NCBI RefSeq assembly: GCF_046119375.1
Contig: NW_027362762.1
Coordinates: forward strand, 733,150,001 to 733,214,000
From: Phyllobates terribilis
Lineage: Eukaryota
DNA length: 64,000 nt
Direction of reading: 5' to 3'
Below are positions 3,218 to 60,600 of this stretch, piece after piece; the first letter of the stretch is position 1, and each line of letters opens with the position of its first letter. The notes under the pieces were generated by a model, which was not told where the DNA came from, ran no database searches, and saw only the letters and a list, made by a program, of their open reading frames with translations. Made by a program: the position numbers and the translations under genes.

Positions 3218-3319
3218 AAAGCTAGACTTGCCAGGATAAAAGTGGCCAAGACAGGAACTTCATCTGCCTACCTGCACAGTAAACGGAACGGCTTACTGAA
3301 TGAAGCACTGGAAATGGCG
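3218..3319 (+). CDS. KCND3: KCND3 (Kv4.3) internal coding exon, 102 nt, phase 0/0: [34 protein letters not shown]
   Basis: Polypyrimidine tract and acceptor (ttttccct tacacAG) at 3216-3217, GTGAGT donor at 3320. The translation matches my recollection of the Kv4.3 post-S6 segment [34 protein letters not shown], with the same 34-codon length. Confidence 0.96.
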
Positions 3320-12894: not shown

Positions 12895-15800
12895 TTACTC
12901 TGCTGTCATTTGGTGGTGATGAGAAGTCTGGCCAATCCAGCCCTTGTTCATTTTGATAAGGGTCAGCTTGTCAGCATTGTCAGTTAACAGGCGAGTGCGC
13001 TTATCAGTTATAATTCCCCCAGTGGCACTAAAAACACGCTCCGATAACACGCTAGCGGCAGGGCAGGCCAGGACCTCCAAGGCGTACAGAGCGAGTTCAT
13101 TCCAAGTGTCCAGCTTGGATACCCAATAATTAAAAGGCACAGAGGAATCACGGAGGACGCTGGTACGATCGGCAAGGTACTCCCTCACCATCTTTTGAAA
13201 CTTTCCACTCCTTGTGAGAGTACCCCGCGCCTCAGGGCCTGTAAGCTGGGCGGGTGTCAGAAAACTGTCCCAGAACGTTGACAGTGTTCCCCTGCCTCTG
13301 CTGGATTGGAGTTGCATCTCTCTCGCCTGTACGCCTTGGTTGGGCAACGAACTGTGACCTCTGCCGCTAGCGTGTTCAGATGGGAATTTTTTTAAGAGTT
13401 CTGCAGCAAGGGCCTTCTGGTATTGCCCCATTTTTGTAGACCTCTCCACCTCAGGAATAAGAGAGTGAAAGTTCTCCTTGTAGCGGGGGTCTACAAGTGT
13501 CACCAACCAGTAATGACTGTCACCCAACATTTTGACAACGCGAGGGTCAAGGTTAAGGCAGCGTAACATAAAGTCAGCCATGCGTGCCAGACTGGTAACG
13601 GGCAAGATTTCCGTGTCCTCACCAAGATGACGACTGACCATGCTCTCCTCCTCCTCCTCTTCCTCCTCCCCCCTGTCCTCAGGCCACCCACGCTGAACCG
13701 ACGGTATGACACTTGTACAGGTACTACCGTCTACAACGCATGATAGCAGCTCCTGTTCTTCCTCCTCCTCCTCCTCCTCTCCCTCATTGTCCCCCAATGC
13801 ACGTTGGGATGAGATGAGGCTGGGCTGTGTGTAATCGCCCGCTACGGCTTCTTGATCCATCTCATCATACTCTGGCTGCAATGCCTCCTCTTTAATTCTC
13901 TGCAGAGAGCGTTGCAAAAGACAGACAAGTGGGATGCTGACACTAATGATGGCGTCATCGCCACTCACCATCTTGGTGGCCTCCTCAAAGTTTGTCAGGA
14001 TGGTACATATGTCAGACATCCAGGTCCACTCCTGAGGTCTTATGTGTGGAGTCTGACCTGAATATCGACGGCCTTGTTGCAGCTGGTACTCCACAACTGC
14101 TCTCTTCTGCTCACAAATCCTTTGCAACATGTGGAGGGTAGAGTTCCAACGTATGGGGACATCACACACCAGTCGGTGTGCCGGAAGCTGCAAACGCTGC
14201 TGCAACACAGCAAGGGCGGAGGAAGCTGTAGCCAACTTGCGAAAATGAGCTGACAGGCGGCGTACTTTCACGAGCAGATCTCGCAACTCGGGGTACGATT
14301 TAAGAAACCGCTGAACCACGAGGTTAAGCGCATGAGCCAGGCATGGTACGTGTGTGATCTCACCTCGCCTCAGAGCCGCCACCAGGTTACGGCCATTGTC
14401 ACACACGACCATGCCGGGATGTAGGTTCAGCGGTCTCAGCCACAGATCTGCCTGCTCTTTCACAGCTGTCCACAACTCACAAGCAGTGTGAGGTTTATCA
14501 CCTAAGCTTATGAGTTTCAGCACAGCCTGTTGCCGCTTGGCGGAGGCAGTACTGCAATGCTTCTAGCTTGTAACTGATGTGGTGATATCTGAGATGGAGG
14601 CTGAACATGAGGAGGAGGAGGAGGAGGATGCGCAGGAGCTGTACACTGTGGGGGCAACTCTGACTGACATAGGGCCCTCAATCCTCGGTGTGGGGAGGAT
14701 GTGTTCCGTCCCAAGGTCCGACTGGGTCCCGGCTTCCACTATGTTTACCCAGTGTGCCGTCAGAGAGATGTACCGTCCCTGGCCACAAGCACTTGTCCAC
14801 GTGTCCGTTGTCAGGTGGACTCTCCCAGTAACTGCGTTGTTGAGGGCACGGCAGATGCTTTGGGACACGTGCTTGTGTAGTGCGGGTATGGCACACCGGG
14901 CAAAATAGTGTCGGCTGGGGACCGAGTACCGAGGGACGGCCACCGCCATAAGATTGCGGAAGGATACCGTCTCCACCAGCCTAAAAGGCAGCATTTCCAA
15001 TGCAAGCCGTCGTGAAATGTGCGAATTTAGGACTGTGGCCTGTGGGGCGTTAGCTGCGAATTTCCGCTTTCGTTCAAAGGTCTGGGATATGGACAATTGA
15101 ATGCTGCGGTGGGACGTGGACGTGGACGTTGATGCTGTTTCTTGAGAAACTGCCATAACAAGTGAAGACTAAGAGGAGGGGGCATCTTTACATGCAGTAT
15201 GGACAGGGGATTGCCTTGCACACACAACAGGGGGTTCTATTGCACGCACAACAGTGGAAGAAGCTGTGGTGACACCCGCTGACACTGGTCGTGGACCTTG
15301 GGTTTCGCCCCACAATGTCGGGTGCTTTGCTGCCATGTGCCTGATCATGCTGGTGGTGGTCAGGCTGGTAGTTTTGTCACCCCTGCTGATGCTGGCATGG
15401 CAGGTGGAACATATGGCCTTTTTGGGGTTATCAGCAGAGTCTTTAAAAAAATTCCAGACTCTGGAAGACCTACCGCTTGTACTGGCAACGTCCCTCGTGT
15501 TGGTGTTATGGGGAACGGTTGCCTGCCTTCTGTCTGCGGCCACCACACTGCTTCTTCCTGCCTGTTGGGGTACTCTGCCTCCCTCCCCCTGTGTACTGCT
15601 GGCCTCACTCTGCATGTCCTCCTTCCACGTTGGGTCAGTTACTAGATCATCCACCACCTCCTCCTCTTCCACTTGCGCACCACGATCCTCCTCCTCACTT
15701 CCTGGCAATTGTGTCTAGTCATCGTCCACCTCTTGTGACAGATTGCCAACATCGACTTCCTGTGGCCGTGGCTGTTCAAATATTTGGGCATCGCAACATG

Positions 15801-19660: not shown

Positions 19661-22075
19661 TAGTGATGAGCGAGCATGCTCGCCACTGCTCGGTACTCGC
19701 CCGAGCATCTCAGTACTCAAGATGCTCGGAGCTCGCCAAGTACTTTCAAGATGCTTGGGCGGGAGCTCGGGTCCCCGTCCTGCATGTTTGGCGCTATTTA
19801 GAGCACCAATCATGCAGGGGTTGTCTGCCACTCACTGTAATGTCACAGCTATGGTGGTTGTGACATTACAGTGATTGCCCAAATCGATGGGAACAGTGCT
19901 CACAGTGAAACATGAAAAGCCGGCAATTCATCAGCGACAATTTAGAACAGAAAGAATAGAACATCACACATAGATTAGATAGATAGAAACATGTCAGTCA
20001 CATATATAATAAGTTCAGTGACCGTGTTGGTTACTGTACTTGTTATTTAGTGTTAAAATAAAGGATTTATTAAAAAAAAAATAACAGTGTTTTCATGCAC
20101 CCGTCTCTTTAAAAAAGCCGGCCGGCAATTCTTCAGCGGCATACACCGGTACCTGACAATTTAGAACAGAAAGAATAGAGCTTCACACATAGATTAGATA
20201 GATAGAAACATGTCAGTCACATATATATGAAGTACAGTGACAATGTTGCTTACTGTACTTGTCATTTAGTGTAAAGGATTTATTAAAAAAAATAATAGTG
20301 TTTTCATGCACCGTCTCTTTAAAAAAGCCGGCCGGCAATTCAGCATCTGTACCCGACAATTTATAACAGACAGAATAGAGCTTCACACATAGATTAGATA
20401 GATAGAAACATGTCAGTCACATATATATGAAGTACAGTGATAGTGTTGGTTACTGTACTTGTCATTTAGTATTAAAATAAAGGATTTATTATTAAAAAAA
20501 ATTGGCGTGGGGTTCGCCTTAATTTTAGTCTCTAGCGGAGGTTAAGCAGACGGCTGGGGCAGATGTTTGAAGCCTGGGAAGGGGGTAATACCCACGGAGC
20601 TTCCCAGGCTACTAATATGAGCCCCCAGCTGAATACATAGCCTTTACTAGCTATTAAAATGGGGGACCCCCCCAAAAAAATGACGTGGGGTCCCCCCTAA
20701 TTTAATAGCTAGCAAAGGCTAGGCAGACAGCTGGGGGCTGATATTAATAGCCCAGGAAGGGTGCCATGAATATTGGCCCCCTCCCAGGCTAGAAACACCA
20801 GCCGTCAGCCGCCCCAGAAATGGCGCATCCATAGGATGCGCCAATTCTGGCACTTAGCCTCGCTCTTCCCACTGCCCTGTAGCGGTGGCAGTGGGGTAAT
20901 AGGGCTGGGGTTGATGTCAGCTTATAATGCCAGCTGACATCAAGCCCAGGTTAGTAATGGAGAGGCGTCTATAAGACACCCCCATTACTAACCCCATAGT
21001 CAAAGTTAAAAAAAACACAAACACCCAGAATAAAGTCCTTTAATTGAAATAAACACACAATTCTTTAATGTTCTAAATTAAACCATACTTACCATCACGC
21101 CCATTCCAGCTGAAGCCAATGTCTTCTACAATAAAAGTAAAATAATAAAGCAACCTCATCCTTACCTTTCCATGGTTCCCAGGACGGCTCCAGCTCTACT
21201 ACATTCACATGACAGGCTGGATCGCAGCCGAAAGCTGCCATCCAGCTTGCCATGCCGCAGACACTGAGAAGCGCAGGCATGCTTGCGCTCCTCAGTGTCT
21301 GGCTGTGACGGCATCCAGATGAGCCGATTTCATGTCCAATGAACTCAGCTCACCTCATGCACGTCACTGACAGCGTGGGAGAATTCTCCTGCGCATGCGG
21401 TGAGCATGAGAGAATTCTCCTGCGCATGCGGTGAGTGCAGGAGAATTCTCCCACGCTGTCAGTGACATGCATGAGGTGAGCTCATGTCCAATGAACTCAG
21501 CTCACCTCATGCACGTCATTAACAGCGTGGGAGAATTCTCCTGCGCTCAGCGCTTGAGCAGGAGAATTCTCCCACGCTGGGATGGCATTGAGATGACAGG
21601 CTGGATCGCACTGCGCTCTGCAGTGTCTATGAAGGATGGCATGCTGGATGGCAGCGCTCAGCTGCCTGTCATCTCAGTGGTTTAATTTAGAACATTAAAG
21701 AATTGTGTGTTTATTTCAATTAAAGGACTTTATTCTGGGTGTTTGTGTTTTTTTTTTACTTTGACTATGAGGTTAGTAATGGAGGTGTCTTGTAGACGCC
21801 TCTCCATTACTAACCTGGGCTTGATGTCAGCTGGCATTATAAGCTGACATCAACCCCAGCCCTATTACCCCACTGCCACCGCTACAGGGCAGTGGGAAGA
21901 GCGAGGCTAAGTGCTAGAATTGGCGCATCCTATGGATGCGCCATTTCTGGGGTGGCTGACGGCTGGTGTTTCTAGCCTGGGAGGGGGCCAATATTCATGG
22001 CACCCTTCCTGGGCTATTAAGATCAGCCCCCAGCTGTCTGCCTAGCCTTTGCTAGCTATTAAAATAGGGGGGAAC
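19661..22075. mobile_element. Non-autonomous hAT-ended fold-back element, copy A (left end retained; right boundary approximate)
   Basis: TAGTGATGAGCG terminus related to the hAT end at 18434, about 3 tandem ~180-230-bp units (19900-20530), and ~390-bp inverted arms at about 20700-21085 and 21680-22070 around nested hairpins. Confidence 0.7.
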
Positions 22076-23958: not shown

Positions 23959-24051
23959 GGCTCCACAGAGGAAGAGCAGCACATAGGAAAATCTGCATCG
24001 CTGATAGAAAGTCAACACCACCACCTGCTGCACTGCCTGGAAAAGACAACT
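23959..24051 (+). CDS. KCND3: KCND3 coding exon, 93 nt, phase 0/0: [31 protein letters not shown]
   Basis: tctgtttAG acceptor and GTAAGT donor. Contains the Kv4-family [14 protein letters not shown] motif and is in frame with the previous exon. Confidence 0.97.
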
Positions 24052-29476: not shown

Positions 29477-31109
29477 CCGTACAGACCAAAAGTTTGGACA
29501 CACCTTCTCATTTAAAGATTTTTCTGTATTTTCATGACTATGAAAATTGTACATTCACACTGAAGGCATCAAAACTATGAATTAACACATGTGGAATTAT
29601 ATACTTAACAAAAAAGTGTGAAACAACTGAAAATATGTCTTATATTCTAGGTTCTTCAAAGTAGCCACCTTTTGCTTTGATGACTGCTTTGCACACTCTT
29701 GGCATTCTCGTGATGAGCTTCAAGAGGTAGTCACCCGAAATGGTCTTCCAACAATCTTGAAGGAGTTTCCAGAGATGCTTAGCACTTGTTGGCCCTTTTG
29801 CCTTCACTCTGCGGTCCAGCTCACCCCAAACCATCTCGATTGGGTTCAGGTCTGGTGACTATGGAGGCCAGGTCATCTGGCGTAGCACCCCATCACTCTC
29901 CTTCTTGGTCAAATAGCCCTTACACAGCCTGGAGGTGTGTTAGGGGTCATTGTCCTGTTGAAAAATAAATGATGGTCCAACTAAACGCAAACCGGATGGA
30001 ATAGCATGCCGCTGCAAGATGCTGTGGTAGCCATGCTGGTTCAGTATGCCTTCAATTTTGAATAAATCCCCAACAGTGTCACCAGCAAAGCACCCCCACA
30101 CCATCACACCTCCTCCTCCATGCTTCACGGTGGGAACAAGGCAAGTAGAGTCCATCCGTTCACCTTTTCTACGTCGCACAAAGACACGGTGGTTGGAACC
30201 AAAGATCTCAAATTTGGACTCATCAGACCAAAGCACAGATTTCCACTGGTCTAATGTCCATTCCTTGTGTTCTTTAGCCCAAACAAGTCTCTTCTGCTTG
30301 TTGCCTGTCCTTAGCAGTGGTTTCCTAGCAGCTATTTTACCATGAAGGCCTGCTGCACAAAGTCTCCTCTTAACAGTTGTTGAAGACATGTGTCTGCTGC
30401 TAGAACTCTGTGTGGCATTGACCTGGTCTCTAATCTGAGCTGCTGTTAACCTGCGATTTCTGAGGCTGGTGACTCGGATAAACTTATCCTCAGAAGCAGA
30501 GGTGACTCTTGGTCTTCCTGTCCTGAGGCGGTCCTCATGTGAGCCAGTTTCTTTGTAGCGCTTGATGGTTTTTGCAACTGCACTTGAGGACACTTTCAAA
30601 GTTTTCCCAATTTTTCGGACTGACTGACCTTCATTTCTTAAAGTAATGATGGCCACTCGTTTTTCTTTACTTAGCTGCTTTTTTCTTGCCATAATACAAA
30701 TTCTAACAGTCTATTAAGTAGGACTATCAGCTGTGTATCTAACAGACTTCTGCACAACACAACTGATGGTCCCAATCCCATTAATAAGGCAAGAAATCCC
30801 ACTTATTAAACCCGACAGGGCACTCCTGTGAAGTGAAAACCATTTCCGGTAACTACCTCTTGAAGCTCATCAAGAGAATGCCAAGAGTGTGCAAAGCAGT
30901 CATCAAAGCAAAAGGTGGCTACTTTGAAGAACCTAGAATATAAGACATTTTCAGTTATTTCACACTTTTTTGTTAAGTATATACAGTAATTCCACATGTG
31001 TTAATTCATAGTTTTAATGCCTTCAGTGTGAATGTACAATTTTCATAGTCATGAAAATACAGAAAAATCTTTAAATGAGAAGGTGTGTCCAAACTTTTGG
31101 TCTGTACTG
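29477..31109 (-). mobile_element. Full-length Tc1 DNA transposon (1633 bp) with long (~230-bp) TIRs and TA TSD
   Basis: TA-ccgtacagaccaaaagtttggacac ... gtgtccaaacttttggtctgtactg-TA. Confidence 0.93.
29640..30692 (-). pseudogene. Tc1 transposase (DD34E type), 351 codons in one frame with two in-frame stops
   Basis: ORFs 29940..30692 and 29640..29834 share a frame. Motifs WSDESK, QQDNDP and LNPIEMV are present. Stops are TAA after DNDP and TAG after WPP. Confidence 0.92.
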
Positions 31110-34889: not shown

Positions 34890-34946
34890 GGATTGTCCTA
34901 TCTTGTGGATGATCCCCTGTTATCTGTACGAACTTCCACTCTAAAG
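34890..34946 (+). CDS. KCND3: KCND3 alternatively spliced 19-aa cassette exon (Kv4.3L insert): GLSYLVDDPLLSVRTSTLK
   Basis: gtcctgtAG acceptor, GTATTA donor, 57 nt, frame-preserving. Nearly identical to the mammalian Kv4.3L insert GLSYLVDDPLLSVRTSTIK as recalled. This exon distinguishes KCND3 from KCND1 and KCND2. Confidence 0.95.
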
Positions 34947-37623: not shown

Positions 37624-37871
37624 AACCATGAGTTCATGGATGAACAGATGTTTGAACAGAACTGCCGTGAGAGCTCCATGCAGAACTATCCATCCAGCCG
37701 CAGCCCATCTCTGTCCAGCCACCATGGAATTACATCATCTTGCTGTTCTCGTAGGAACAAGAAGACCACACATCTCCCAAACTCTAATGTTCCAGCTACA
37801 AGGCTACGTAGCATGCAAGAGCTTAGCACTATCCACATCCAATGTGGAGATCAACCTTCTCTAACTACAAG
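37624..37871 (+). CDS. KCND3: KCND3 coding exon, 248 nt, phase 0/2: [35 protein letters not shown]...[23 protein letters not shown]
   Basis: ttttccgcAG acceptor and AG/GTATGG donor. Overlaps ORF 37636..37881 and matches the Kv4.3 C-terminal segment. Confidence 0.96.
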
Positions 37872-38820: not shown

Positions 38821-39877
38821 GCATAGAGTGGCTTGCAAAAGCATTCACCACACCCACATTTTTCCATTTTTCATGTCTTGCAACTTCACAACCTGGAATT
38901 TCACAGGTTTTTTTTGAGGGTTTGCATCAGTTCATGTAAAGAACATGCCCACAACTGTTAACATTTGGTTTCCTTTTAAATGTGAAGCAAACAACAAATA
39001 GGACAAATAGCTGAAAACTTCAGTGAGCATAACTATTCACCCCCTAAAGTCAGTACTTTGTAGAGCCTCCTTTTGTGGAAATTACAGTTGCAAGTCACTT
39101 TTGATAAGTCTCTTTGAGCTCTCCACAACTTGCCACTGGGATTTTTGTCCATTCCTCAAGGCAAAACTGCTCCAGCTCCTTCAAGTTAGATGGTTTCCTC
39201 TGGTGAATAGCAATCTTCAAGTCTGGCCACAGATTCTCAATTGGATTAAGGCCTGGGCTTTGGCTAGGCCACGCCAAAACATTTACATGTTTCCACTTGA
39301 ATGTTGCTTTAGCAGTATGCTTTGGGCCACTGTCTTGTTAGGAGGTGAACTTCCATCCCAGTCTCAAATCACTGACAGACTGAAACAGGTTTTGCTTGAG
39401 AATATCACTGTATTTTGCACCATAAATCTTCAAATCGACTCAAACCATTTTTCCTGTCCCTGCTGCTTAAAAATATCCTTACAGCATTATACTGCCACCA
39501 CCATGTTTCACTGTGGGGATGGTGTTCTTGGGGTGATAAATTGTGTTGTTTGGTTCCAGACATAGCATTTGCCTTTGTGGAAAAAAGTTACATTTTGGTC
39601 TCATCTGACCACAGCACCTTCCTCCATACATTTGGGGACTCTCCCACATGTCTTTTGGCAAACTCAAAACTAGCCTCATAATTTTTCTGGTAAGTAAAGG
39701 CTTTTTCTGTTCACACTTCCATAAAGGCCACCTATATGGAGTGTACAGCTTATTATGGTTGTATGGGCAGATACTCCATTCTCTGATTGGGAACTCTGCA
39801 GCTCCTTCATGGTTACCTTTGGTCTCAGTGCTGCCTCTCTGATTAATGCTTACCTTTCCCAGGCTGATAGTTTTGGT

Positions 39878-40465
39878 TTTAGCATGTCGCTCTCCGCAAG
39901 GAGAAACTTTACTTCTTAGATACCGGTCTGATGCCTCTCACCCAGTCAAACCAGAACTCACACTTTGCACTGATGAGGGGCAGTACCCCGAAACACAGTG
40001 TCTGCAAATTGAGTTTCTGGTGTTGGCTTTTATCCTAAGTCATGTGACAAGGCTCCTTAAAGGGTCAATATTGATTTTTAGGATTGCTACTACCAATAGG
40101 TGGCACTAGAGTTCTTGGTCTCTACATCTCTGAAGAGACAATTTGCATATTTCCAAGAGGAGCATTGCGGCTTGAAAGGTCTTCTCACCTTGACGTGCTT
40201 AGCATGTCGCTCTCCACAAGGAGATTCGTTACTTCTTAAATACCGGTCTGATGACTCTCACCCAGCCAAACCAGAACTCACACTTTGCACTGACGGTGAC
40301 TGACACACTCACAGTGTCTGCAAATTAAGTTTCTAGTCTTGGCATTTATCCTAAGTCATGTGACAAGGCTAGTTAAATGGTCAATATTGACTTTTACGAT
40401 TGCTACTTCCAATAGGTGGCACTAGAGTTATAGTTTTCTTCCTCTGTGAATAGACAATTTGTATA
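39878..40465 (+). repeat. 320-bp tandem repeat (~1.8 units) carrying hammerhead motifs; retrozyme/Penelope-pLTR-like
   Basis: agcatgtcgctctcc at 39881 and 40201, and cactttgcac at 39961 and 40281. A related partial unit lies at about 55320-55490. Confidence 0.85.
39964..40008 (+). ncRNA. Minimal type I hammerhead ribozyme
   Basis: TTTGCA [stem I], CTGATGA, GGGG-CAGTA-CCCC [stem II], GAAA, CAC-A-GTG [palindromic stem III], TC, TGCAAA [stem I complement]. All core nucleotides are present, with a GUC cleavage triplet at 40000-40002. Confidence 0.88.
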
Positions 40466-40564
40466 TACTGACAGGTGGACTTCCTTTCACTAAGCATGTG
40501 ACTTATGAAGGTAATTGCTTGCTCCAGAAATTTTTAGGGAATTCATCGCAAAAGGAGTGAAAAT

Positions 40565-43209
40565 AATTGTGTTTTCATGCACCGTCTCTTTAAAAAAGCC
40601 AGCCGGCAATTCAGCATCTGTACCCGACAATTTAGAATATAAGGAATAGAGAATCACATAGATTATATAGATAGAAACATGTCAGTCACATATATATGAA
40701 GTACAGTGACAGTGTTGATTACTGTACTTGTCATTTAGTGTTAAAATAAAGGATTTATTTAAAAAAAATTGGCGTGGGGTTCCCCTTAATTTTAGTCTCT
40801 AGCGGAGGTTAAGCAGACGGCTGGGGCAGATGTTTGAAGCCTGGGAAGGGGGTAATACCCACGGAGCTTCCCAGGCTACTAATATCAGCCCCCAGCTGAA
40901 TACCTAGCCTTTACTAGCTATTAAAATGGGGGACCCCCTCAAAAAAATGACGTGGGGTCCCCCTTAATTTAATAGCTAGCAAAGGCTAGGCAGACAGCTG
41001 GGGGCTGATATTAATAGCCCAGGAAGGGTGCCATGAATATTGGCCCCCTCCCAGGCTAGAAACACCAGCCGTCAGCCGCCCCAGAAATGGCGCATCCATA
41101 GGATGCGCCAATTCTGGCACTTAGCCTCGCTCTTCCCACTGCCCTGTAGCGGTGGCAGTGGGGTAATAGGGCTGGGGTTGATGTCAGCTTATAATGCCAG
41201 CTGACATCAAGCCCAGGTTAGAAATGGAGAGGCGTCTATAAGACACCCCCATTACTAGCCCCATAGTCAAAGTTAAAAAAAAAAACACAAACACCCAGAA
41301 TAAAGTCCTTTAATTGAAATAAAGACACAATCCTTTATTGTTCTAAATTAAACTCTACTTACCATCACGCCCATTCCAGCTGAAGCCAACGATCTCCTGC
41401 AATAAAAGAAAAATAATAAAGCAACCTCATCCTTACCTTTCCATGGTTCCCAGGACAGCTCCAGCTCTGCTACATCGAGATGACAGGCTGGACCGCAGCA
41501 GAACGCTGCCATCCAGCCTGTCATCCCGCAGACACTGAGAAGCGCAGGCTTGCTTGCGCTCCTCAGTGTCTCTCTGTGACGGCATAAAGATGAGCCGAGG
41601 TCATGTCCAATGAACTCGGCTCACCTCATGCACGTCACTGACAGCGTGGGAAAATTCTCCTGCACTCAGCGCTTCAGCGTGAGAATTTTCCCACGCTGTC
41701 AGTGACGTGCATGAGGTGAGCTGAGTTCATTGGACATGACCTCACCTCATTCACGTCACTGACAGCGTGAGAAAATTCTCACGCTGAAGTGCTGAGTGCA
41801 GGAGAATTTTCCCACGCTGTCAGTGACGTGCATGAGGTGAGGTGAGCCGAGTTCATTGGACATGACCTCGGCTCATCTTTATGCCGTCACAGAGAGACAC
41901 TGAGGAGCGCAAGCAAGCCTGCGCTTCTCAGTGTCTGCGGGATGACAGGCTGGATGGCAGCGTTCTGCTGCGGTCTAGCCTGTCATCTCGATGTAGCAGA
42001 GCTGAAGCTGTCGTGGGAACCATGGAAAGGTAAGGATGAGGTTGCTTTATTATTTTTCTTATATTGCAGGAGATCGTTGGCTTCAGCTGGAATGGGCGTG
42101 ATGGTAAGTATAGTTTAATTTAGAACAATAAAGAATTGTGTGTTTATTTCAATTAAAGGACTTTTTTCTGGGTGTTGTGTTTTTTTTAAATACTTTACTA
42201 GAAATTCATGGTGGTCATGTCTAATATTGGCGTGACCCCATGAATTTCGGGCTTAGGGCCAGCTGATAATGCCAAGCTGGCCTTAACCCCTTTATTACCC
42301 AGTGAGCCACCGCACCAGGGCCCTGGATGAGTTGGGTACAGCGCCAGAAGATGGCGCTTCTATGAACGCGCCATTTTCCGGGGTGGCAGCGGACTGCAAT
42401 TTGCAGCGGGTGGGGCCCAGAAAGCTTGGGCCTCCCTGCGCTGCGGATTCCAGCCCCCAGCTGCCTAGTTGTACCTGGCTGGACACAAAAATAGGGCGAA
42501 GCCCCACGTATTTTTTTTTTTAATTATTTCATGAAATTCATGAAATAATTAAGAAAAAAAGGCCTTCCCTATATTGTTGTGTCCGGCCAGGTACAAATAG
42601 GCAGCTGGTGGTTGGGGGCAGCCCGTTCCTGCCTGCTGTACCTGGCTGGACACAAATATAGTGCGAAGCCCCTACTGCTCCCATCGAGCTGATCCTGCTG
42701 GCACGAGTGGACGGGGGACAGACATAGGCCGATGGGAGTAGTAGTGTCACATCGGCCTATGTCTGCCTGCACGCACACATCCGCACACATCCCGCACACA
42801 TCGCATAGACACCGCACACACCCGCAGACATCGCACAGACACCGCGCACACCCGCACACATCGCACAGACACCGCACATACCCGCAGACATCGCACACAC
42901 CCGCAGACATCGCACACACTCGCAGACAAACCCACACACACCAATCATGACAGGCTGATCGTCTGGGAGGTGACGCTGTGCGGCCAGCCAATGACTGTAA
43001 TGCCCACAAACAACATGGCTGCGGCATTACAGTGACTGGCTGGCAATCCCTGCCTGTTCATTGGCTCTGTAAAGAGCACCAAACATGCAGGGCGGAGACC
43101 CGAGCTCCCGCCCGAGTAACCCGGAAATGCTCGGTGCTCGCCGAACATCCCGAGTAGCGTGATGCTCGGGCGAGTACCGAGCAGTGTCGAGCATGTTCGC
43201 TCAACACTA
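40565..43209. mobile_element. Non-autonomous hAT-ended fold-back element, copy B (right end retained; left boundary approximate)
   Basis: About 40565-41650 is a direct copy of about 20300-21400. A long palindrome spans about 41270-42190 and a CA-rich minisatellite 42770-42940. The last ~250 bp is near-identical to 18190-18434 and ends GCTCAACACTA. Confidence 0.75.
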
Positions 43210-52900: not shown

Positions 52901-55816
52901 CCCTGCCATGCACCCAAACAGTAGTTTTCCCGCACATATGGGGTATCTGCATACTCAGGAGAAATTGCACAACAAATTTTGGAGTCAATTTTTTTCCTGT
53001 TAACCCACTGAAAATAAAAAATTTGGGGCTAAAATAACATTTTTGTGTGAAAAATTAGATTTTTTTTATTTTCATAGCTCTACATTACAAACTTCTGTGA
53101 AGCACATGGGGGGTCAAGGGGCTCACCACAAATAAAGATAAATTAATTGAGGGGTATAGTTTACAAAATGGGTTCTCTTGTGGTGAGTTTCAGGGGCTCT
53201 CCAAAAGCGACATGGCATCCGCTAACGATTCCAGCAAATTTTGCGTTCAAAAAGTCAAATGGCGCTCCTTTCCTCCGGAGCCCTGCCATATGCCCAAACA
53301 GTTGTTTTCCCCCCACATATGGGGTATCGGTGTACTCAGGAGAAATTGCACAACAAATTATGTGGTGCATTTTCTCCTGTTACCCTTGTGAAAATGCAAA
53401 ATTTGGGGCTAAAATAACATTTTTGTGGACAAAATTAGATTTTTGCTTTTCATGGCTCAATGTTATAAATTTCTGTGGAGCACCAGGGGGTTTAAGGTGC
53501 TCACCACACATCTAGATACATTCCTTGAGAGGTCTAGTTTCCAAAATGGCATCAGTTGTGGAGGGTTTCCATTGTTTAGGCACATCATGGCTCTCCAAAC
53601 AGGACATGGCGTCCGCTAATGAGTTTAGCCAATTTTGAGTTCAAAAAGTCATACGGTGCTCCCTTCCGAGCTCTGCCATGCACCCAAACAGTAGTTTTCC
53701 CCAACATATGGAGTATCTGTGGGCTAAGGAGAAATTGCACAACAAATTTTATTGCATTTTCTCTTGTTACCCTTGTGAAAATAAAAAAAAATTAAGTCTA
53801 AAGAAAAACTATTGAGAAAAAAAGTTAAATGTTCATTTTTTGCTTCCACATTCTATTAATTCTTATGAAACACCTCATGAAGGGTTAATAAACTTCTTGA
53901 ATGTGGTTTTGAACACTTTTAAGGGTGCAGTGTTTATAATGGTGTCAATTTTGGGTATTTTCTGTCATTTTCTGCTATTATGTCTCTCAAAGTCACTTCA
54001 AATGTGATGTGATCCCTAAAAAAATGATTTTGTAAATTTTGTTGGAAAAATTAGAAATTGCTGGTCAACTTTTAACTTCTAACTTCCTAACAAAAATAAA
54101 TAATGTTTCAAAAATTGTGCTGATGTAAGGTAAACATGTGGGAAATGTTATTTATTAACTATCTTGTGTGACTTAACTCTGATTTAAGGGCTTGAAAATG
54201 AAAAGTTTGAAAATTGCGAAATTATCGCCAAATTTTTGATTTTTTTTCAGAAATAAAAGTCATATCAAACAAACTTTACCCATATCATGAGGTACAATAT
54301 GTCACGAAAAAATAAACTCAGAATCGATGCGATCCATTGAAGAGTTGAATTATTACCACATAAAGTGACACTAGTCAAAATTGTAAAATTTGGCTTGGTC
54401 ATGAAGGTTAAAAGATTTTTGGGGGATAAAAGGGTTAAGTTGATGTCCAACAGTTTAACAAGTTTTACCACATGACCAATGGTGTGATGTGTGCATCATA
54501 TAATCAGGTCAGATTTTCATCCACTAGCAAAGTGGTTCTGATTGACTGCCCGCAGAAATCTTGAAAATCCTAAGAAATTGATAGAGAATGTATATTGGAA
54601 ATAGTATCACTTGCACTACACAAAAAATAACCTTTTTTTGCTGAAACTATACTAGCCCTTTAAGAATTTATCAGCGAAACATGGCTGGAAAGAATAATCA
54701 TGAAAGATGAAGCAAGGGTCTAGTTTATTGGGATCATAACAAATCTCATTTTACCGCTTGGTTAGTAAATAGAGCTGTTAGTGGAAGCAATTCTAGACAC
54801 AATAGGGGACCATGTCTCAAAGAGAGAAGAGGGATTAAGAAGTAATGAAGGTGTGTAAAAATAGAAGATTTATGTTACATCAAGGCAGCAAAATGAAGCA
54901 GAATAGACAGGAAATACAATACGACGAGGGCAAAATATTTATAAAACACAAAAGCACATTAACCAAAGGCATAAGATCAACATCTGCCTTTTAAAAGGGT
55001 GTCTAGAAGATTTTCCCTTCTAAATTCTTCTATTAGAATCCATATCCATTAACGTAAACCTCTCAGGTCCTCTGACTCTTCCCAACTGCATAAAAACCTA
55101 ATCCTTTATTCTAATAAGGTATTTTATGTGCTTAATTAGGCTGCAGGCTTTTAAAAATAAACTTTTATTCCACAGCATTACATACGCTAATGAGGCAGGA
55201 CTAGACCGGAAAGGGTCAGTAGACCTGACAAGTTTTTTTAAAAATAATAAACATCTACAAATATTGGATACCATAATAAAAAAAATGTAAAATAAATACT
55301 TCATTATTTTAATACATATAATAAGGCTTGTTAAAGGGTCGATAATATCTTTAGGATTGCTACTTCTAGCAGGCGGCAATAGAGTTCAAGTCCTCTTCCT
55401 CTCTAAAGAATATTTAATTTTGCCGAGGAGCACTGGATTGCCTATAAGCCTCCTTACACTGGCATGTTAGGCATGTCATGCTCCACAGGGGCGGATACTG
55501 ACAGCTTGGGGCCCCTGTGCAAGAAATATGTCTCGGCCCCCCTCCCTGCTCGGCAAGCTGCTTATGATGAGGGCAATCTGGCCGTGGGACTCCCAGAGAC
55601 TCGGGCTCTGAGCAACAGGCAACATCTCCGTTAGGATTCAGTTCTGCTGAGCCCAGCCATGTATATATTATATTAAATTATATGTCTGGTATCTATACCG
55701 TCTAGTATCTATATGATAGCATACTAAAAATAAAAGTATGGAATATTGTAGTAGACTGCAGTATTCCATACAATGGTATCCTGTAAAGCATGTACTTAAA
55801 ATATTTACTTTTTTTT

Positions 55817-57666: not shown

Positions 57667-60600
57667 TGTGGTAGATTGACTCACTCGGCTTCTTAAAAAG
57701 GCAGACACAGAAACCATTTCTATTTAAAGTGCGGCTGGTTTATTGCAATCCTCATAAACCACGTCACCAAAAAACGTAAATGCAGCCTTTGTCCAGCAGA
57801 AGGTAAAACATAAAATAACAAGCCCATACAATAGTGCTGGTTAGCCCACCTGGCTTAGAATCCAGCTTCCATGTCCTTTAACAAAGGCATTCAATCCAGG
57901 AGACCTGCAATCTCCATACATGCATGTGTGAAACAAACAGATCAGAGCTTTCACCTCCAGGTCCACCCCACACCAAATGCTCTAAAAGCTGTGAATTTTA
58001 TCCTCTGACCTCCTTCCTGTCTACAGGTGTTCACTCATCCTAGCACTAAAGATGGCTAATTAACCCTTATTCCTTTGTGTGCTGGAACCTTTTTCCTATG
58101 TTTAATTACTGGAGCTAACAATCTCAGTGCTACCTATCTCCCCTCCAGTACTTTGCTAGTGACTTTGTCACATATTCCACTCCTCTGCCCAAAGCCGTAG
58201 GTTTTGGCACCTTCAGGCACTAAACAGGGTAGTCTAAAGTGGCATCTGCATTACTGTGCAGCTTCCCAGTCCTGTGTGCCTCATGAAAGATGAAGACCTA
58301 TAGCCTTGATTTTCAACTCTTGGAACGCCATCCCTGCTTCAAGAGGTCATTTGGTCATTTACATCTTCGTGCCCTTAAGAAGGTCTATCAGGGGGTGTGG
58401 CTATCATGGCGAAATTCGGTATACTCCGCTGATAGTATCCCATCATTCCCAGAAATGCCCGAAGCTGTTCCTTGGAGACCGGTTTCGGCCAATTTTGGAC
58501 TGCCTCCACCTTATTCAGCTGTGGCTTTACTTTGCTTCTTCCAATGATGTAGCCCAGGTATTTTCCTTTCTTTTTCCCAATGGCACACTTCTTTGGGTTT
58601 ATGGTAAACCCCCCTTTCCTCAGTGCATAAAAGCATGGCCTGGACCTTCTGCAGATGACTTCCCCAATCTGGGCTTAATATCACAATATCATCGAGGTAA
58701 GCTGCAGCATACTTTTTATGAGGGGCTAAGATCCGGTCTATGTCCCTCCGGAAGGTAGCCGGGTCTCTTTGCAGGCCAAATGGGCTTTTAGTATACTGGA
58801 AGCAACCGTCCGGTGTAAAATTGGTCGTCGTCTTCTTTTTGGCACCTTGAGAGACGGGGATTTGCCAATAACCTTTCGTTAGGTCTAGGGAGGTGATGTA
58901 TGTGACTGACCATAGCTTTGATATGAGATCATAGTCGCGGGGTATCAGATATGCGTCAATTTTAGCCCCTTCCATTAAAAACAACTTGCGGTGGGCTTCG
59001 GGGATTCTATACGGCTTTTGGTTCACCTGTATATGTGGTTCCATCAGGATTCTATGTTCACCAACCTGCATATGTCTTGGTAACTCTGAAAACAGGTTTT
59101 GGTTCTGCTGAAGAAGTTCTTGGCACTGTTGTTTCTGGGCCGGTGACAGTGTCACCTTCTGGTCTTTCCAGCCCACGTGGAATTTCAACTTGGTTTCCCT
59201 GTTGCCCTGCCTTGATGAATAGCAGCACGAGAGGATTTTGGAATGGAGAGGTGGTAGCGATTAACTGGCAGGTGGGACAGGACTTGCAATATTTTAGGAT
59301 TTCACAGTGACATCTGCGCCAATAGTACCTCTGCATGACCCGTTGTTGAGTTTTGTCCTCCCCCAGATGGCCACCCAAGACATGTGAATGGGCCCTGTCC
59401 AACACTCTTTATCTAAAGGTTCCTGGTACCAATAATTGCTCCACTATCTCCTCCTTCACCTTAGTGACCTGGTACAGTAAGCCCCCACTCAACATGAAAT
59501 AGGGAAACCTTGTGTCAGATCCTGACTCCTGTGTTATGCCATTTATGACAGTTACCTTATTGAATGCCTCTTTTATAGTTAGGTCCCTATGTTGGGTGAA
59601 CCCCAATTTTTCTGTGGTCATCCCTATCTCAGGAATGTCTGCCTCAGGGGATACTACCGTCTCCTCTTCACCTACTACACAGAAGGGAAACTCGTCAGAC
59701 TCTGAGGTTGGTGTGACTTTTTTAGGGCCAACCCATTTCTTACCTGAGCAATTGAGGTCTCCACCCCTCCCCTACAAGTCCCAAAACTACACATATTCCC
59801 AACCTATGATAATTGAGTGCAACAAATCCTGGACCACGCTGACCTCATGGGATTCAATACCTCGGGCTGTCTCAATTACCACTCTGGCCACCGGATAGTC
59901 TTTAGCATCCCTATGAATGCAGCGGATGCCCACCTTCTTCCCAGGGATCAATTGGAGAGGGAGTGTGTCCCTTTTGAGGGTCACCAAACTCCCTGAGTCT
60001 AGTAGTCCAGTCATTTTCAGGCCATTCACTTTGACAGGACAAGCTTAGGGCCCCTTGCCGGGTGGACAGTCCACACTGCAAGCTGGATATGCGAAAAAGG
60101 AACACCGGTGTCCTATGCTGCAGTCCATTTGCTCGGTGGTCAAGGGACAATGGACTGATATATGACCTGGGCTATGACATCTCCAGCAAATTACATCCCC
60201 CGATGAGGGCCTTGGCATGACCTCTGACGCCCCCTTGGACTTTGGATGCCCCACCTCCTTTTTAACATCAGCCTCCCCAGTATGGAATGGGTTGCCTCGA
60301 CCCCCTGATACCTTTCGACCAGTCCAACCTAGTAATTGGTGTTCCAGGGATTTCCCTGGGCAACCCAAGTATGCATCGGGCTCGGTAGGGAGTGCACGAA
60401 CCGATCCATTACAATTCACTCTACCATCTGCGCTGGGGTAGAGGACTCCGGCTGTAATCACTTTTGGATGAGATGCAACAGATCAAACATTTGGGAGCGA
60501 GGGGGTTTGTCCCGGTGAAATGCCCAGCGGTGTCACCCCCAAGCGCACCAACATTTCTGTTTTCAATTTTTCATATTCTTTGGCGTCCTGTAAGGAAAAA

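What the first reader, a model, noticed from the sequence alone, without database searches (positions are those of the whole stretch)
39964..40008. Intact hammerhead ribozyme in a 320-bp retrozyme-like tandem repeat, sense to the KCND3 pre-mRNA
Seen: a full type I core with 6-bp stem I, 4-bp stem II and a GUC site, repeated at a 320-nt period. Stem III (CAC-A-GUG) cannot close as a monomer but is palindromic. Established knowledge: newt satellite-2 and metazoan retrozyme/Penelope hammerheads have such stems and cleave as double hammerheads, producing small circular RNAs. The second copy has lost its core (CTGACGGTGAC...) but keeps CACAGTGTC/TGCAAA (GUC at 40316-40318). Copy 1 could therefore pair with it to form a complete active site (inference). 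Both copies are on the transcribed strand of a KCND3 intron, so co-transcriptional cleavage of the pre-mRNA is conceivable.
Basis: partly seen in the sequence, partly recalled or inferred. Interest (0 to 1): 0.78.

Follow-up and report, generated by a model that had tools for sequence, protein, structure and literature searches.

The report
Retrozyme hammerhead in frog KCND3 intron
A complete self-cleaving hammerhead RNA motif does sit here, but it belongs to one old, half-decayed copy of a very abundant amphibian jumping repeat (a "retrozyme") that landed inside another transposon in an intron of the potassium-channel gene KCND3, so it is an ordinary example of a known class.

Summary
Window 39964-40008 (+) carries every conserved hammerhead position: helix I of 6 bp, CUGAUGA, helix II of 4 bp, GAAA, a 9-nt near-palindromic helix III and a GUC site. 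It lies in unit 1 of a 1.9-copy, 316-bp tandem repeat. Unit 2 has a destroyed core but keeps the substrate strand (GUC 40316-40318).

The repeat is a 596-bp insertion (39878-40473). It has a 3-bp GGT target duplication and splits a dead Tc1-like transposase gene. It lies 2.1 kb into the last coding intron of KCND3, in sense.

Contigs of four public runs from three coded species put thousands of 85-99% alike pieces on the 1-kb stretch laid, flanking repeats included, and the summed depth peaks over the ribozyme. A second fragment without a ribozyme lies at 55296-55490.

Folding agrees that the monomer's helix III is unstable and that two intact domains prefer the double hammerhead. This matches amphibian non-LTR retrozymes and newt satellite 2, a known kind. 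The scan has already noted it on other DNA of this genome (256 hammerhead notes).

With only one core left, no circle can be released here. At most there is one weak cut. An effect on KCND3 is conceivable but unsupported.

One oddity remains. The decay of unit 2 is concentrated in its core (P about 1e-6).

The parts
39878..40473 (+). Whole retrozyme insertion (596 bp, 1.9 units, 42.8% GC, no long ORF)
   Evidence: TRF. The flanks are the two halves of one Tc1-like gene. GC.
39879..40198 (+). Unit 1 (320 bp) with the intact hammerhead
   Evidence: Alignment A1.
40199..40466 (+). Unit 2, 3'-truncated, 86% identical to unit 1, ribozyme core destroyed
39964..40008 (+). Type I hammerhead. Helix I 39964-69/40003-08; core CUGAUGA 39970-76; helix II 39977-80/39986-89 with loop CAGUA; GAAA 39990-93; helix III ACAC-A-GUGU 39993-40001; C17 = 40002, with predicted cleavage between 40002 and 40003.
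39951..40021 (+). Extended hammerhead domain: helix I continues beyond an internal loop (CAC/U) as AACUCA/UGAGUU and CCAG/CUGG
   Evidence: Best folds.
40284..40324 (+). Dead hammerhead of unit 2. Helix I strands (40284-89, 40319-24), helix III 3' strand and GUC (40316-18) are kept. The core is replaced by CTGACGGTGACTGACACACT.
   Evidence: Almost no contig depth on 40296-40329.
40003..40318 (+). The 316-nt monomer that two cleavages would release. It is strongly structured as a circle (-93.9 kcal/mol, z -3.76, 0 of 200 shuffles).
39875..39877 (.). Left copy of the 3-bp target-site duplication GGT
40474..40476 (.). Right copy of the target-site duplication GGT
39095..39877 (-). Decayed Tc1-like transposase gene, C-terminal and middle parts (host of the insertion)
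   Evidence: Pfam DDE_3 E 5e-6 and HTH_Tnp_Tc3_2 E 2e-5. ORFs.
40477..40560 (-). Continuation of the same Tc1-like gene on the other side of the insertion. The reading ..GSP|PKLSAWER.. is restored when the insert and one GGT are removed.
   Evidence: Contigs of this Tc1 family in run X9 read on ..GAGAGTTTTGGTGG beyond 39849, without an insertion. The end coordinate is approximate.
37624..37871 (+). KCND3 exon (human Kv4.3 residues 488-569), with donor GTATGG following; the ribozyme lies 2.1 kb downstream
   Evidence: PDB sequence search E 5.5e-42 to Kv4.3 against 1.4e-24 to Kv4.2. Boundaries.
3218..3319 (+). KCND3 exon ([13 protein letters not shown]...NEALEMA), AG/GT bounded
23959..24051 (+). 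KCND3 exon (...[15 protein letters not shown]), AG/GT bounded
34890..34946 (+). KCND3 19-codon exon GLSYLVDDPLLSVRTSTLK (the long-isoform cassette, from my memory of Kv4.3)
55296..55490 (+). Second fragment of a related unit: the 3' part of a unit, the unit junction and the first ~25 nt of the next unit, with no ribozyme. About 76% identity over the 107-nt blastn match.
40141..40148 (+). Perfect octamer ATTTGCAT in unit 1 (ATTTGTAT in unit 2); a possible promoter element, untested

Best explanation
Window 39878-40473 is an old, dead-end insertion of 1.9 head-to-tail units of a very abundant frog non-LTR retrozyme, the class that includes newt satellite 2. It landed with a 3-bp GGT target duplication inside a Tc1-like DNA transposon that already lay in the last coding intron of KCND3, and it is in the same orientation as the gene.

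The way the family works is taken from the literature, not shown here. Tandem units are transcribed. Neighbouring hammerheads pair through their palindromic helix III into a double hammerhead and cut after GUC. The ~316-nt monomers are ligated into circles and copied back into DNA, probably by Penelope-like-element enzymes.

At this locus unit 1 still has a complete ribozyme, but the core of unit 2 is destroyed, so two cuts and a circle are no longer possible. Two events remain possible. One is a slow monomer-mode cut after C40002. The other is a cut after C40318, made by the unit-1 core acting on the unit-2 substrate strand. Either would be a by-product with no demonstrated role for KCND3.
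For: - Motif complete and unique in the window, and its whole core is aligned by a hammerhead covariance model.
- 316-bp tandem organisation.
- 42.8% GC and no long ORF.
- Precise insertion: the minus-strand Tc1-like reading frame GSP|PKLSAWER is restored once the insert and one GGT are removed. Contigs of that Tc1 family in run X9 read ..GTTTTGGTGG, without an insertion.
- Family size: 18,318, 16,822, 769 and 252 contigs of four runs from three coded species lie on the 1-kb stretch at 85-99% identity (flanking repeats included). Summed depth is at or near its peak over the ribozyme bins 39956-40023. Contigs join the unit end back to the unit start.
- A second fragment lies in the same window.
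- Folding: helix III adds +0.4 kcal/mol in the monomer; the homodimer's best fold is the double hammerhead (-53.2 against 2 x -24.9); the circular monomer has z -3.76.
- Literature: amphibian retrozymes average 316 bp, and 43-44% of Xenopus copies overlap introns (10.64898/2026.07.22.740005). Axolotl retrozyme hammerheads cleave poorly as monomers (6% and 22% in 1 h) and well as dimers, and occur as linear and circular RNAs (PMC7229834).
- No reverse transcriptase with a GIY-YIG nuclease lies next to the repeat.
Against: - Rfam's type I hammerhead model gives no match even at E<=10.
- No sequence of another family member was in hand, so conservation of the core in the family rests on contig depth, not on an alignment.
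- The runs labelled RNA are guesses. All laid contigs differ by 10% or more from this locus, so neither transcription of this copy nor circles are shown.
- The damage to unit 2 is far too concentrated in the core for uniform decay (P about 1e-6), which plain neutral decay does not explain.
- A 3-bp target duplication is short enough to arise by chance.
Confidence: 0.8

Rival explanations
1. The hammerhead is active in the nascent KCND3 transcript. Acting alone, or paired with the substrate strand of unit 2, it cuts the last coding intron co-transcriptionally. This lowers or tunes production of full-length Kv4.3 mRNA, as proposed for amniote intronic hammerheads and shown for the CPEB3 ribozyme.
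For: - Sense orientation, 2.1 kb behind the donor of an intron that runs at least 26 kb to the window's end.
- The core is complete.
- The conformer with the unit-1 core and the unit-2 substrate pairs at every position and is nested.
- Core damage in unit 2 is non-randomly concentrated, which could reflect selection against a fully active pair.
- Inhibiting the intronic CPEB3 ribozyme raises CPEB3 expression (PMC10919898, abstract).
Against: - The active conformer lies 13.7 kcal/mol above the best fold.
- The monomer's best fold pairs part of the core (CACUG) with CAGUG of helix III.
- Axolotl monomers cleave only 6-22% in an hour (PMC7229834), and 8 of 9 predicted Xenopus dimers did not cleave (10.64898/2026.07.22.740005).
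- Intronic copies are commonplace.
- No read evidence exists for this locus.
- From my own memory of the exon-tethering literature, which I did not check: slow intronic ribozyme cuts are tolerated by splicing.
Confidence: 0.07
2. The repeat is not a retrozyme of its own. It is the tandem terminal repeat (pLTR) left by a 5'-truncated Penelope-like element.
For: - Penelope-like elements carry hammerheads with minimal or palindromic helix III that act as dimers, and Xenopus retrozyme families are sister to pLTRs (10.64898/2026.07.22.740005; PMC7229834).
- Earlier notes of this scan report Penelope-like hammerheads in this genome (s1-204952, s1-196776).
Against: - No reverse transcriptase or GIY-YIG ORF lies between or beside the units. 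The only reverse transcriptase in the window (58511-59405, minus strand) comes with an integrase zinc domain, so it belongs to an LTR element.
- The ribozyme has the canonical layout (6-bp helix I with an internal loop, 4-bp helix II with a loop) described for retrozymes, not the minimal Penelope type.
- Both ends of the insert are clean within a Tc1 gene.
Confidence: 0.1
3. The motif is a chance match inside a local duplication and has no ribozyme ancestry.
For: Rfam's gathering thresholds are not reached.
Against: - 0 of 200 simulated windows give a motif of this quality.
- Thousands of alike contigs in several species lie on the stretch, with depth peaking on the motif.
- Helix II changes on both sides of its pairs among unrelated elements that share this core.
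Confidence: 0.01

Closest known systems
Amphibian non-LTR retrozymes / newt and salamander satellite 2 (Epstein and Gall 1987; Cervera and de la Pena 2020, PMC7229834)
   Same: - Tandem units of ~320-350 bp, low GC and no coding capacity.
- Type I hammerhead with helix I of 6 bp plus an internal loop and helix II of 4 bp.
- A helix III too weak to close alone, hence dimer-mode cleavage.
- 10^4-10^5 copies per genome.
- A strongly structured monomer.
   Different: - Helix III here is ACAC-A-GUGU, a 9-nt near-palindrome. Axolotl HHR_Amex1 is described as a single base pair capped by a palindromic tetraloop.
- The host is a frog according to earlier scan notes, which I did not check.
- This copy is a 1.9-mer with one dead core, so it cannot release a monomer.
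Xenopus non-LTR retrozyme families, e.g. REP4 (Li, Clavereau, Pollet 2026, bioRxiv 10.64898/2026.07.22.740005)
   Same: - Anuran host.
- Mean amphibian unit length of 316 bp.
- Monomers and dimers dispersed along chromosomes.
- 43-44% of copies overlap introns.
   Different: That paper finds introns depleted of copies once the size of each genomic feature is taken into account.
Penelope-like element pLTR hammerheads (Cervera and de la Pena 2014; cited in PMC7229834)
   Same: Hammerheads that need to dimerise through helix III. These elements are the probable source of the enzymes that mobilise retrozymes.
   Different: Those ribozymes are described as minimal variants and flank an RT/GIY-YIG ORF. 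Here the ribozyme has the canonical layout and no such ORF is adjacent.
Domesticated intronic ribozymes: amniote HH9/HH10 (RECK, CTCL; PMC6155905) and the CPEB3 HDV-like ribozyme (PMC10919898)
   Same: A sense-strand self-cleaving motif inside an intron of a conserved gene. The amniote hammerheads are thought to derive from such retroelements.
   Different: Those are single-copy and conserved at orthologous positions over long times. This one is a copy of a high-copy repeat nested in another transposon, its partner unit is decayed, and conservation is untested. Rfam HH9 and HH10 gave no match.

Membership tests
Hammerhead ribozyme, type I | Conserved core: C3 U4 G5 A6 N7 G8 A9, G12 A13 A14, A15.1-U16.1, H17 (not G) | tested here: met
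   CUGAUGA, GAAA, A39993-U40001 and C40002 are all present.
Hammerhead ribozyme, type I | Three helices around the core, helix I open-ended, helix II closed by a loop | tested here: met
   Helix I has 6 bp plus a distal extension. Helix II is GGGG/CCCC with loop CAGUA and a G10.1-C11.1 pair. Helix II changes on both sides of its pairs among unrelated elements with the same core.
Hammerhead ribozyme, type I | A stable helix III closing the junction | tested here: inconclusive
   As a monomer, 3 bp with a triloop costs +0.4 kcal/mol. As a dimer, 4+4 bp around an A.A mismatch gives -7.0 kcal/mol, and the homodimer's best fold is the double hammerhead.
Hammerhead ribozyme, type I | Score at or above the gathering threshold of Rfam RF00163 | tested here: not met
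   No hit at gathering scores or at E<=10. Only RAGATH-1-hammerhead reaches 17.4 bits against a gathering score of 56.3.
Hammerhead ribozyme, type I | Mg2+-dependent self-cleavage after H17 | not testable with these tools
   This needs in vitro transcription.
Non-LTR retrozyme (metazoan) | Head-to-tail units of ~170-400 bp, each with a type I hammerhead | tested here: inconclusive
   There are 1.9 units of 316 bp. Unit 1 is intact. Unit 2 keeps only the substrate half.
Non-LTR retrozyme (metazoan) | No LTR/PBS/PPT, no coding capacity, GC below 50% | tested here: met
   GC is 42.8%. The longest ORF across the insert is 87 aa. The units abut directly. A primer-binding site or polypurine tract was not searched for specifically.
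Non-LTR retrozyme (metazoan) | Many dispersed copies in the genome | tested here: met
   Thousands of contigs at 85-99% identity in runs of three coded species lie on the 1-kb stretch laid, with depth high over the unit. A second fragment lies at 55296-55490. Earlier notes report a very abundant 332-bp family in this genome.
Non-LTR retrozyme (metazoan) | Insertion as a mobile element, with a target-site duplication | tested here: met
   GGT is found on both sides, and the Tc1-like reading frame is restored across the site. A duplication of only 3 bp is weak on its own.
Non-LTR retrozyme (metazoan) | Expressed as linear and circular monomer RNAs | tested here: inconclusive
   Runs guessed to be RNA hold family contigs, including a 479-nt contig at depth 1297 and joins of unit end to unit start. 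Contigs cannot tell circles from tandem transcripts, and the RNA label is a guess.
Penelope-like element terminal repeat | Repeat flanks or adjoins an RT plus GIY-YIG ORF | tested here: not met
   Pfam on all ORFs of 110 aa or more near the repeat, and on the reverse-transcriptase region at 58-60 kb, finds only Tc1, hAT and LTR-element domains.
Domesticated intronic hammerhead (HH9/HH10 type) | Single-copy, conserved at an orthologous intron position across taxa | not testable with these tools
   No other frog genome is in reach. The sequence is multi-copy, which argues against it.

The most novel reading that the evidence does not exclude
The core of unit 2 was not lost by random decay. It was knocked out, by selection or by one complex mutation that was then favoured, because two active hammerheads in the sense strand of the last KCND3 intron were harmful. 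The surviving pair of one enzyme and one substrate-only site still makes a single cut after C40318 or C40002 in nascent KCND3 RNA and modulates use of the last exon. If sense-intronic retrozyme dimers genome-wide show the same asymmetric core loss, this would be direct evidence that these ribozymes act on host pre-mRNAs in vivo.
Probability: 0.05. Interest if true: 0.6.

Novelty: new member of a known kind. Interest (0 to 1): 0.2.

Why it matters
By itself it matters little. It is one more copy of a repeat class known since 1987 and catalogued in amphibians at 10^4-10^5 copies per genome, and this scan has already flagged it many times in this genome.

It has two modest uses. First, it is a cleanly bounded example of integration: a 1.9-mer whose ends are not at the ribozyme cut sites, with a 3-bp duplication, inside a recognisable Tc1 reading frame. 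That bears on how retrozyme cDNAs are made and inserted. Second, the core-focused damage in unit 2 of a sense-intronic copy suggests a genome-wide test of whether host genes select against active double hammerheads in their introns. Li et al. 2026 inferred such selection only from a depletion of copies in introns.

Tried and rejected
- Rfam at gathering thresholds on the whole window found nothing. At E<=10 on 1.1 kb it gave only chance-level hits to unrelated families (IRES_APC, mir-488 and others). I take these as noise.
- The search of earlier findings by sequence was blank.
- A scan of metagenome contigs for the core with its helix III found four contigs (L001-L004). They carry type I hammerheads with GCA/UGC in helix I and an ACACGUGU helix III but different helix II and unrelated flanks. 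The one contig tested (L002) shows no unit-length tandem repeat, and their four ORFs of 90 aa or more have no Pfam domain. They are not members of this family and only served to show helix II covariation. RNAalifold on these five short rows preferred a fold that is not a hammerhead, so I used only its pair table for helix II.
- No Penelope-like element is in the window.
- The last KCND3 coding exon (human residues 570-636) was sought with short peptide words recalled from memory and was not found between 37.9 and 64 kb. I conclude it lies beyond the window, but a diverged exon could have been missed.
- KCND3 exons were handled one at a time. Only exon 37624-37871 was searched by reference.
- The organism was not checked. 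'Frog' and 'golden poison frog' come from earlier AI notes.

Full report
**The observation**

The stretch 39964-40008 on the + strand reads TTTGCA-CTGATGA-GGGG-CAGTA-CCCC-GAAA-CAC-A-GTG-TC-TGCAAA. This is a complete type I hammerhead.
- Helix I has 6 bp.
- The core has C3-A9, G12-A14, the A15.1-U16.1 pair and C17 (= C40002).
- Helix II has 4 bp with a G10.1-C11.1 pair and a 5-nt loop.

A descriptor I wrote finds it as the only hit on either strand of the 64 kb. In 200 Markov-1 simulations the expectation is 0.035 for a loose version (stems of at least 4, 3 and 2 bp) and 0 for this quality.

Helix I continues beyond an internal loop (CAC against U) as AACUCA/UGAGUU and CCAG/CUGG, so the domain spans about 39951-40021.

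Rfam does not recognise the motif at its thresholds. At E<=10 only the RAGATH-1-hammerhead model aligns the whole core, and only when 81 nt are given (17.4 bits, E 0.44).

**The repeat**

TRF reports 39879-40466 with period 316, 1.9 copies and 86% matches. In the pairwise alignment unit 2 reads CTGACGGTGACTGACACACT where unit 1 has CTGATGAGGGGCAGTACCCCGAAA. Unit 2 keeps both strands of helix I, CACAGTGTC and GUC at 40316-40318.

Outside the core the units differ at 26 of 248 aligned columns. Inside the 24-column core they differ at 11 of 20 aligned columns and there is a 4-nt gap. The binomial P is about 1e-6. The unit-2 version occurs nowhere else in the window. Almost no contig lies on bin 40296-40329. 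The change is therefore private to this locus and is not a family variant. I have no firm explanation for it (notebook, 'unexplained').

**Where it sits**

Four AG/GT-bounded exons of a Kv4 channel lie on the + strand:
- 3218-3319
- 23959-24051
- 34890-34946
- 37624-37871

I found them with short peptide words recalled from memory, then checked the last one by reference. It matches human Kv4.3 (KCND3) residues 488-569 at E 5.5e-42, against 1.4e-24 for Kv4.2. That exon ends in a donor (AAG|GTATGG) with 67 residues of the protein still to come. I found no candidate for them up to 64,000.

**How it got there**

On the minus strand the flanks are a decayed Tc1-like transposase gene. Pfam gives DDE_3 at E 5e-6 for 39095-39277 and HTH_Tnp_Tc3_2 at E 2e-5 for 39679-39849.

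Read on the minus strand, the gene runs ...GSP at 40477 onward and PKLSAWER... from 39876 downward. Removing 39878-40473 and one of the two flanking GGT triplets (39875-77, 40474-76) restores GSPPKLSAWER in frame. Contigs of that Tc1 family in another species read on ...GAGAGTTTTGGTGG beyond 39849, without an insertion (loose end in run X9).

The 596-bp block is thus a true insertion with a 3-bp target duplication, not a local slippage product. Its ends do not coincide with the ribozyme cut sites, and it has no poly(A) tail. This fits copying of a multimeric or circular template, but that step is inference.

**The family**

I laid the contigs of four public runs on 39650-40650 at 85% likeness or more.

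| Run | Type and coded species | Contigs laid |
|---|---|---|
| X1 | DNA, organism A | 18,318 |
| X9 | DNA, organism B | 16,822 |
| X20 | guessed RNA, organism A | 769 |
| X15 | guessed RNA, organism C | 252 |

These counts cover the whole 1-kb stretch, and the flanks are themselves repeats. Within the unit:
- Summed depth is at or near its peak over the ribozyme bins 39956-40023. In X9 these bins are several times deeper than most of the rest of the unit.
- Contigs join the unit end back to the unit start (for example 40153 to 39879, with about 30 letters between), which means tandem or circular forms.
- A subfamily reads GAAACACGTGTC, a perfect ACACGUGU palindrome. Most contigs keep the central A of this copy.
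- All laid pieces that were listed differ from this locus by about 10% or more, so they come from other copies.

Nothing here shows that this copy is transcribed, and contigs cannot tell circles from tandem RNA.

A second, ribozyme-less fragment of a related unit lies at 55296-55490. Earlier notes of this scan list 256 hammerhead items in this genome. One is a follow-up that classed a 333-bp copy of a very abundant 332-bp repeat as the same known kind. The scan has therefore found this before on other DNA.

**Structure predictions**

- In the 91-nt domain the hammerhead fold with a 3-bp, triloop helix III is 0.4 kcal/mol worse than the same fold without it. The best fold instead pairs CACUG of the core with CAGUG.
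- Two copies of the unit-1 domain fold best as the double hammerhead. Helices I form between the two strands and helix III has 4+4 bp around an A.A mismatch. The energy is -53.2 against 2 x -24.9 kcal/mol.
- With unit 1 as enzyme and unit 2 as substrate, every required pair exists and the fold is nested. It lies 13.7 kcal/mol above the best fold of the 588-nt transcript. That conformer would cut after C40318. The reciprocal site is dead.
- The 316-nt monomer 40003-40318 folds as a circle at -93.9 kcal/mol, with z -3.76 and 0 of 200 shuffles as stable.

**Comparison with what is known**

- Newt satellite 2 (about 330 bp) was the first animal hammerhead, and it works as a dimer (PMC6155905).
- The axolotl has about 126,000 such motifs in 331- and 353-nt retrozymes. 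They cleave 6% and 22% in an hour as monomers and much better as dimers, and they occur as linear and circular RNAs (PMC7229834).
- A 2026 preprint finds non-LTR retrozymes in all seven amphibians sampled, with a mean unit of 316 bp. In Xenopus 43-44% of copies overlap introns, with a relative depletion once feature size is taken into account. The families are related to Penelope-like pLTRs. Only 1 of 9 predicted dimers cleaved in vitro (10.64898/2026.07.22.740005).
- No Penelope-like ORF is in the window. The only reverse transcriptase belongs to an LTR element.

**Verdict**

This is a member of a known class, in an ordinary place for that class, with one of its two ribozymes dead. A role in KCND3 expression is possible in principle, by analogy with the CPEB3 ribozyme (PMC10919898), but nothing here supports it. 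The one thing worth following up is the core-focused loss in unit 2, by a genome-wide comparison of sense-intronic and other dimers.

Noticed in passing
window 40290-40309 against 39970-39992: Differences between the two retrozyme units are concentrated in the ribozyme core: 11 of 20 aligned columns plus a 4-nt gap, against 10.5% elsewhere (P about 1e-6). The unit-2 version is private to this locus.
   Followed up: partly
window 40141-40148: There is a perfect octamer ATTTGCAT in unit 1 (ATTTGTAT in unit 2), in a part of the unit with high contig depth. From memory, newt satellite 2 is driven by an snRNA-type promoter, and another first-reader note (s1-220956) proposes one for the frog repeat. 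I did not test this.
   Followed up: no
window 40560-41389, 20289-21119, 21680-22073, 41620-41876: A young repeat family. An 834-bp block is 96% identical between 40.6 kb and 20.3 kb, with inverted partial copies and an internal 121-bp tandem/palindromic part. Contig depth on 40568-40635 is about 2-3 million in organism A but about zero in organism B, so it looks like a species-specific, very high-copy element.
   Followed up: partly
window 12895-15708 (-): A hAT-type transposase with long open frames: BED zinc finger (E 7e-10) and hAT C-terminal dimerisation domain (E 2e-10).
   Followed up: partly
window 29940-30692 (-): A second transposase fragment of a different Tc1/Sleeping-Beauty-like family (HTH_Tnp_Tc3_2, HTH_SB). 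It has no DNA similarity to the one that hosts the retrozyme.
   Followed up: partly
window 58511-59405 (-): Pol fragments of an LTR retroelement (RVT_1 E 6e-14, Integrase_H2C2 E 1e-14). It is not a Penelope-like element.
   Followed up: partly
   Followed up: no
window 34890-34946 (+): The 19-codon KCND3 cassette exon (GLSYLVDDPLLSVRTSTLK) is present with AG/GT borders, so this genome keeps the long Kv4.3 isoform exon.
   Followed up: no
L001:84-122, L004:910-948, L002:819-856, L003:473-510 (metagenome contigs): Type I hammerheads with the same GCA/UGC helix I ends and a perfect ACACGUGU helix III, but with different helix II and flanks. They sit in unidentified AT-rich, eukaryote-like contigs, and their ORFs have no Pfam domain.
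   Followed up: partly
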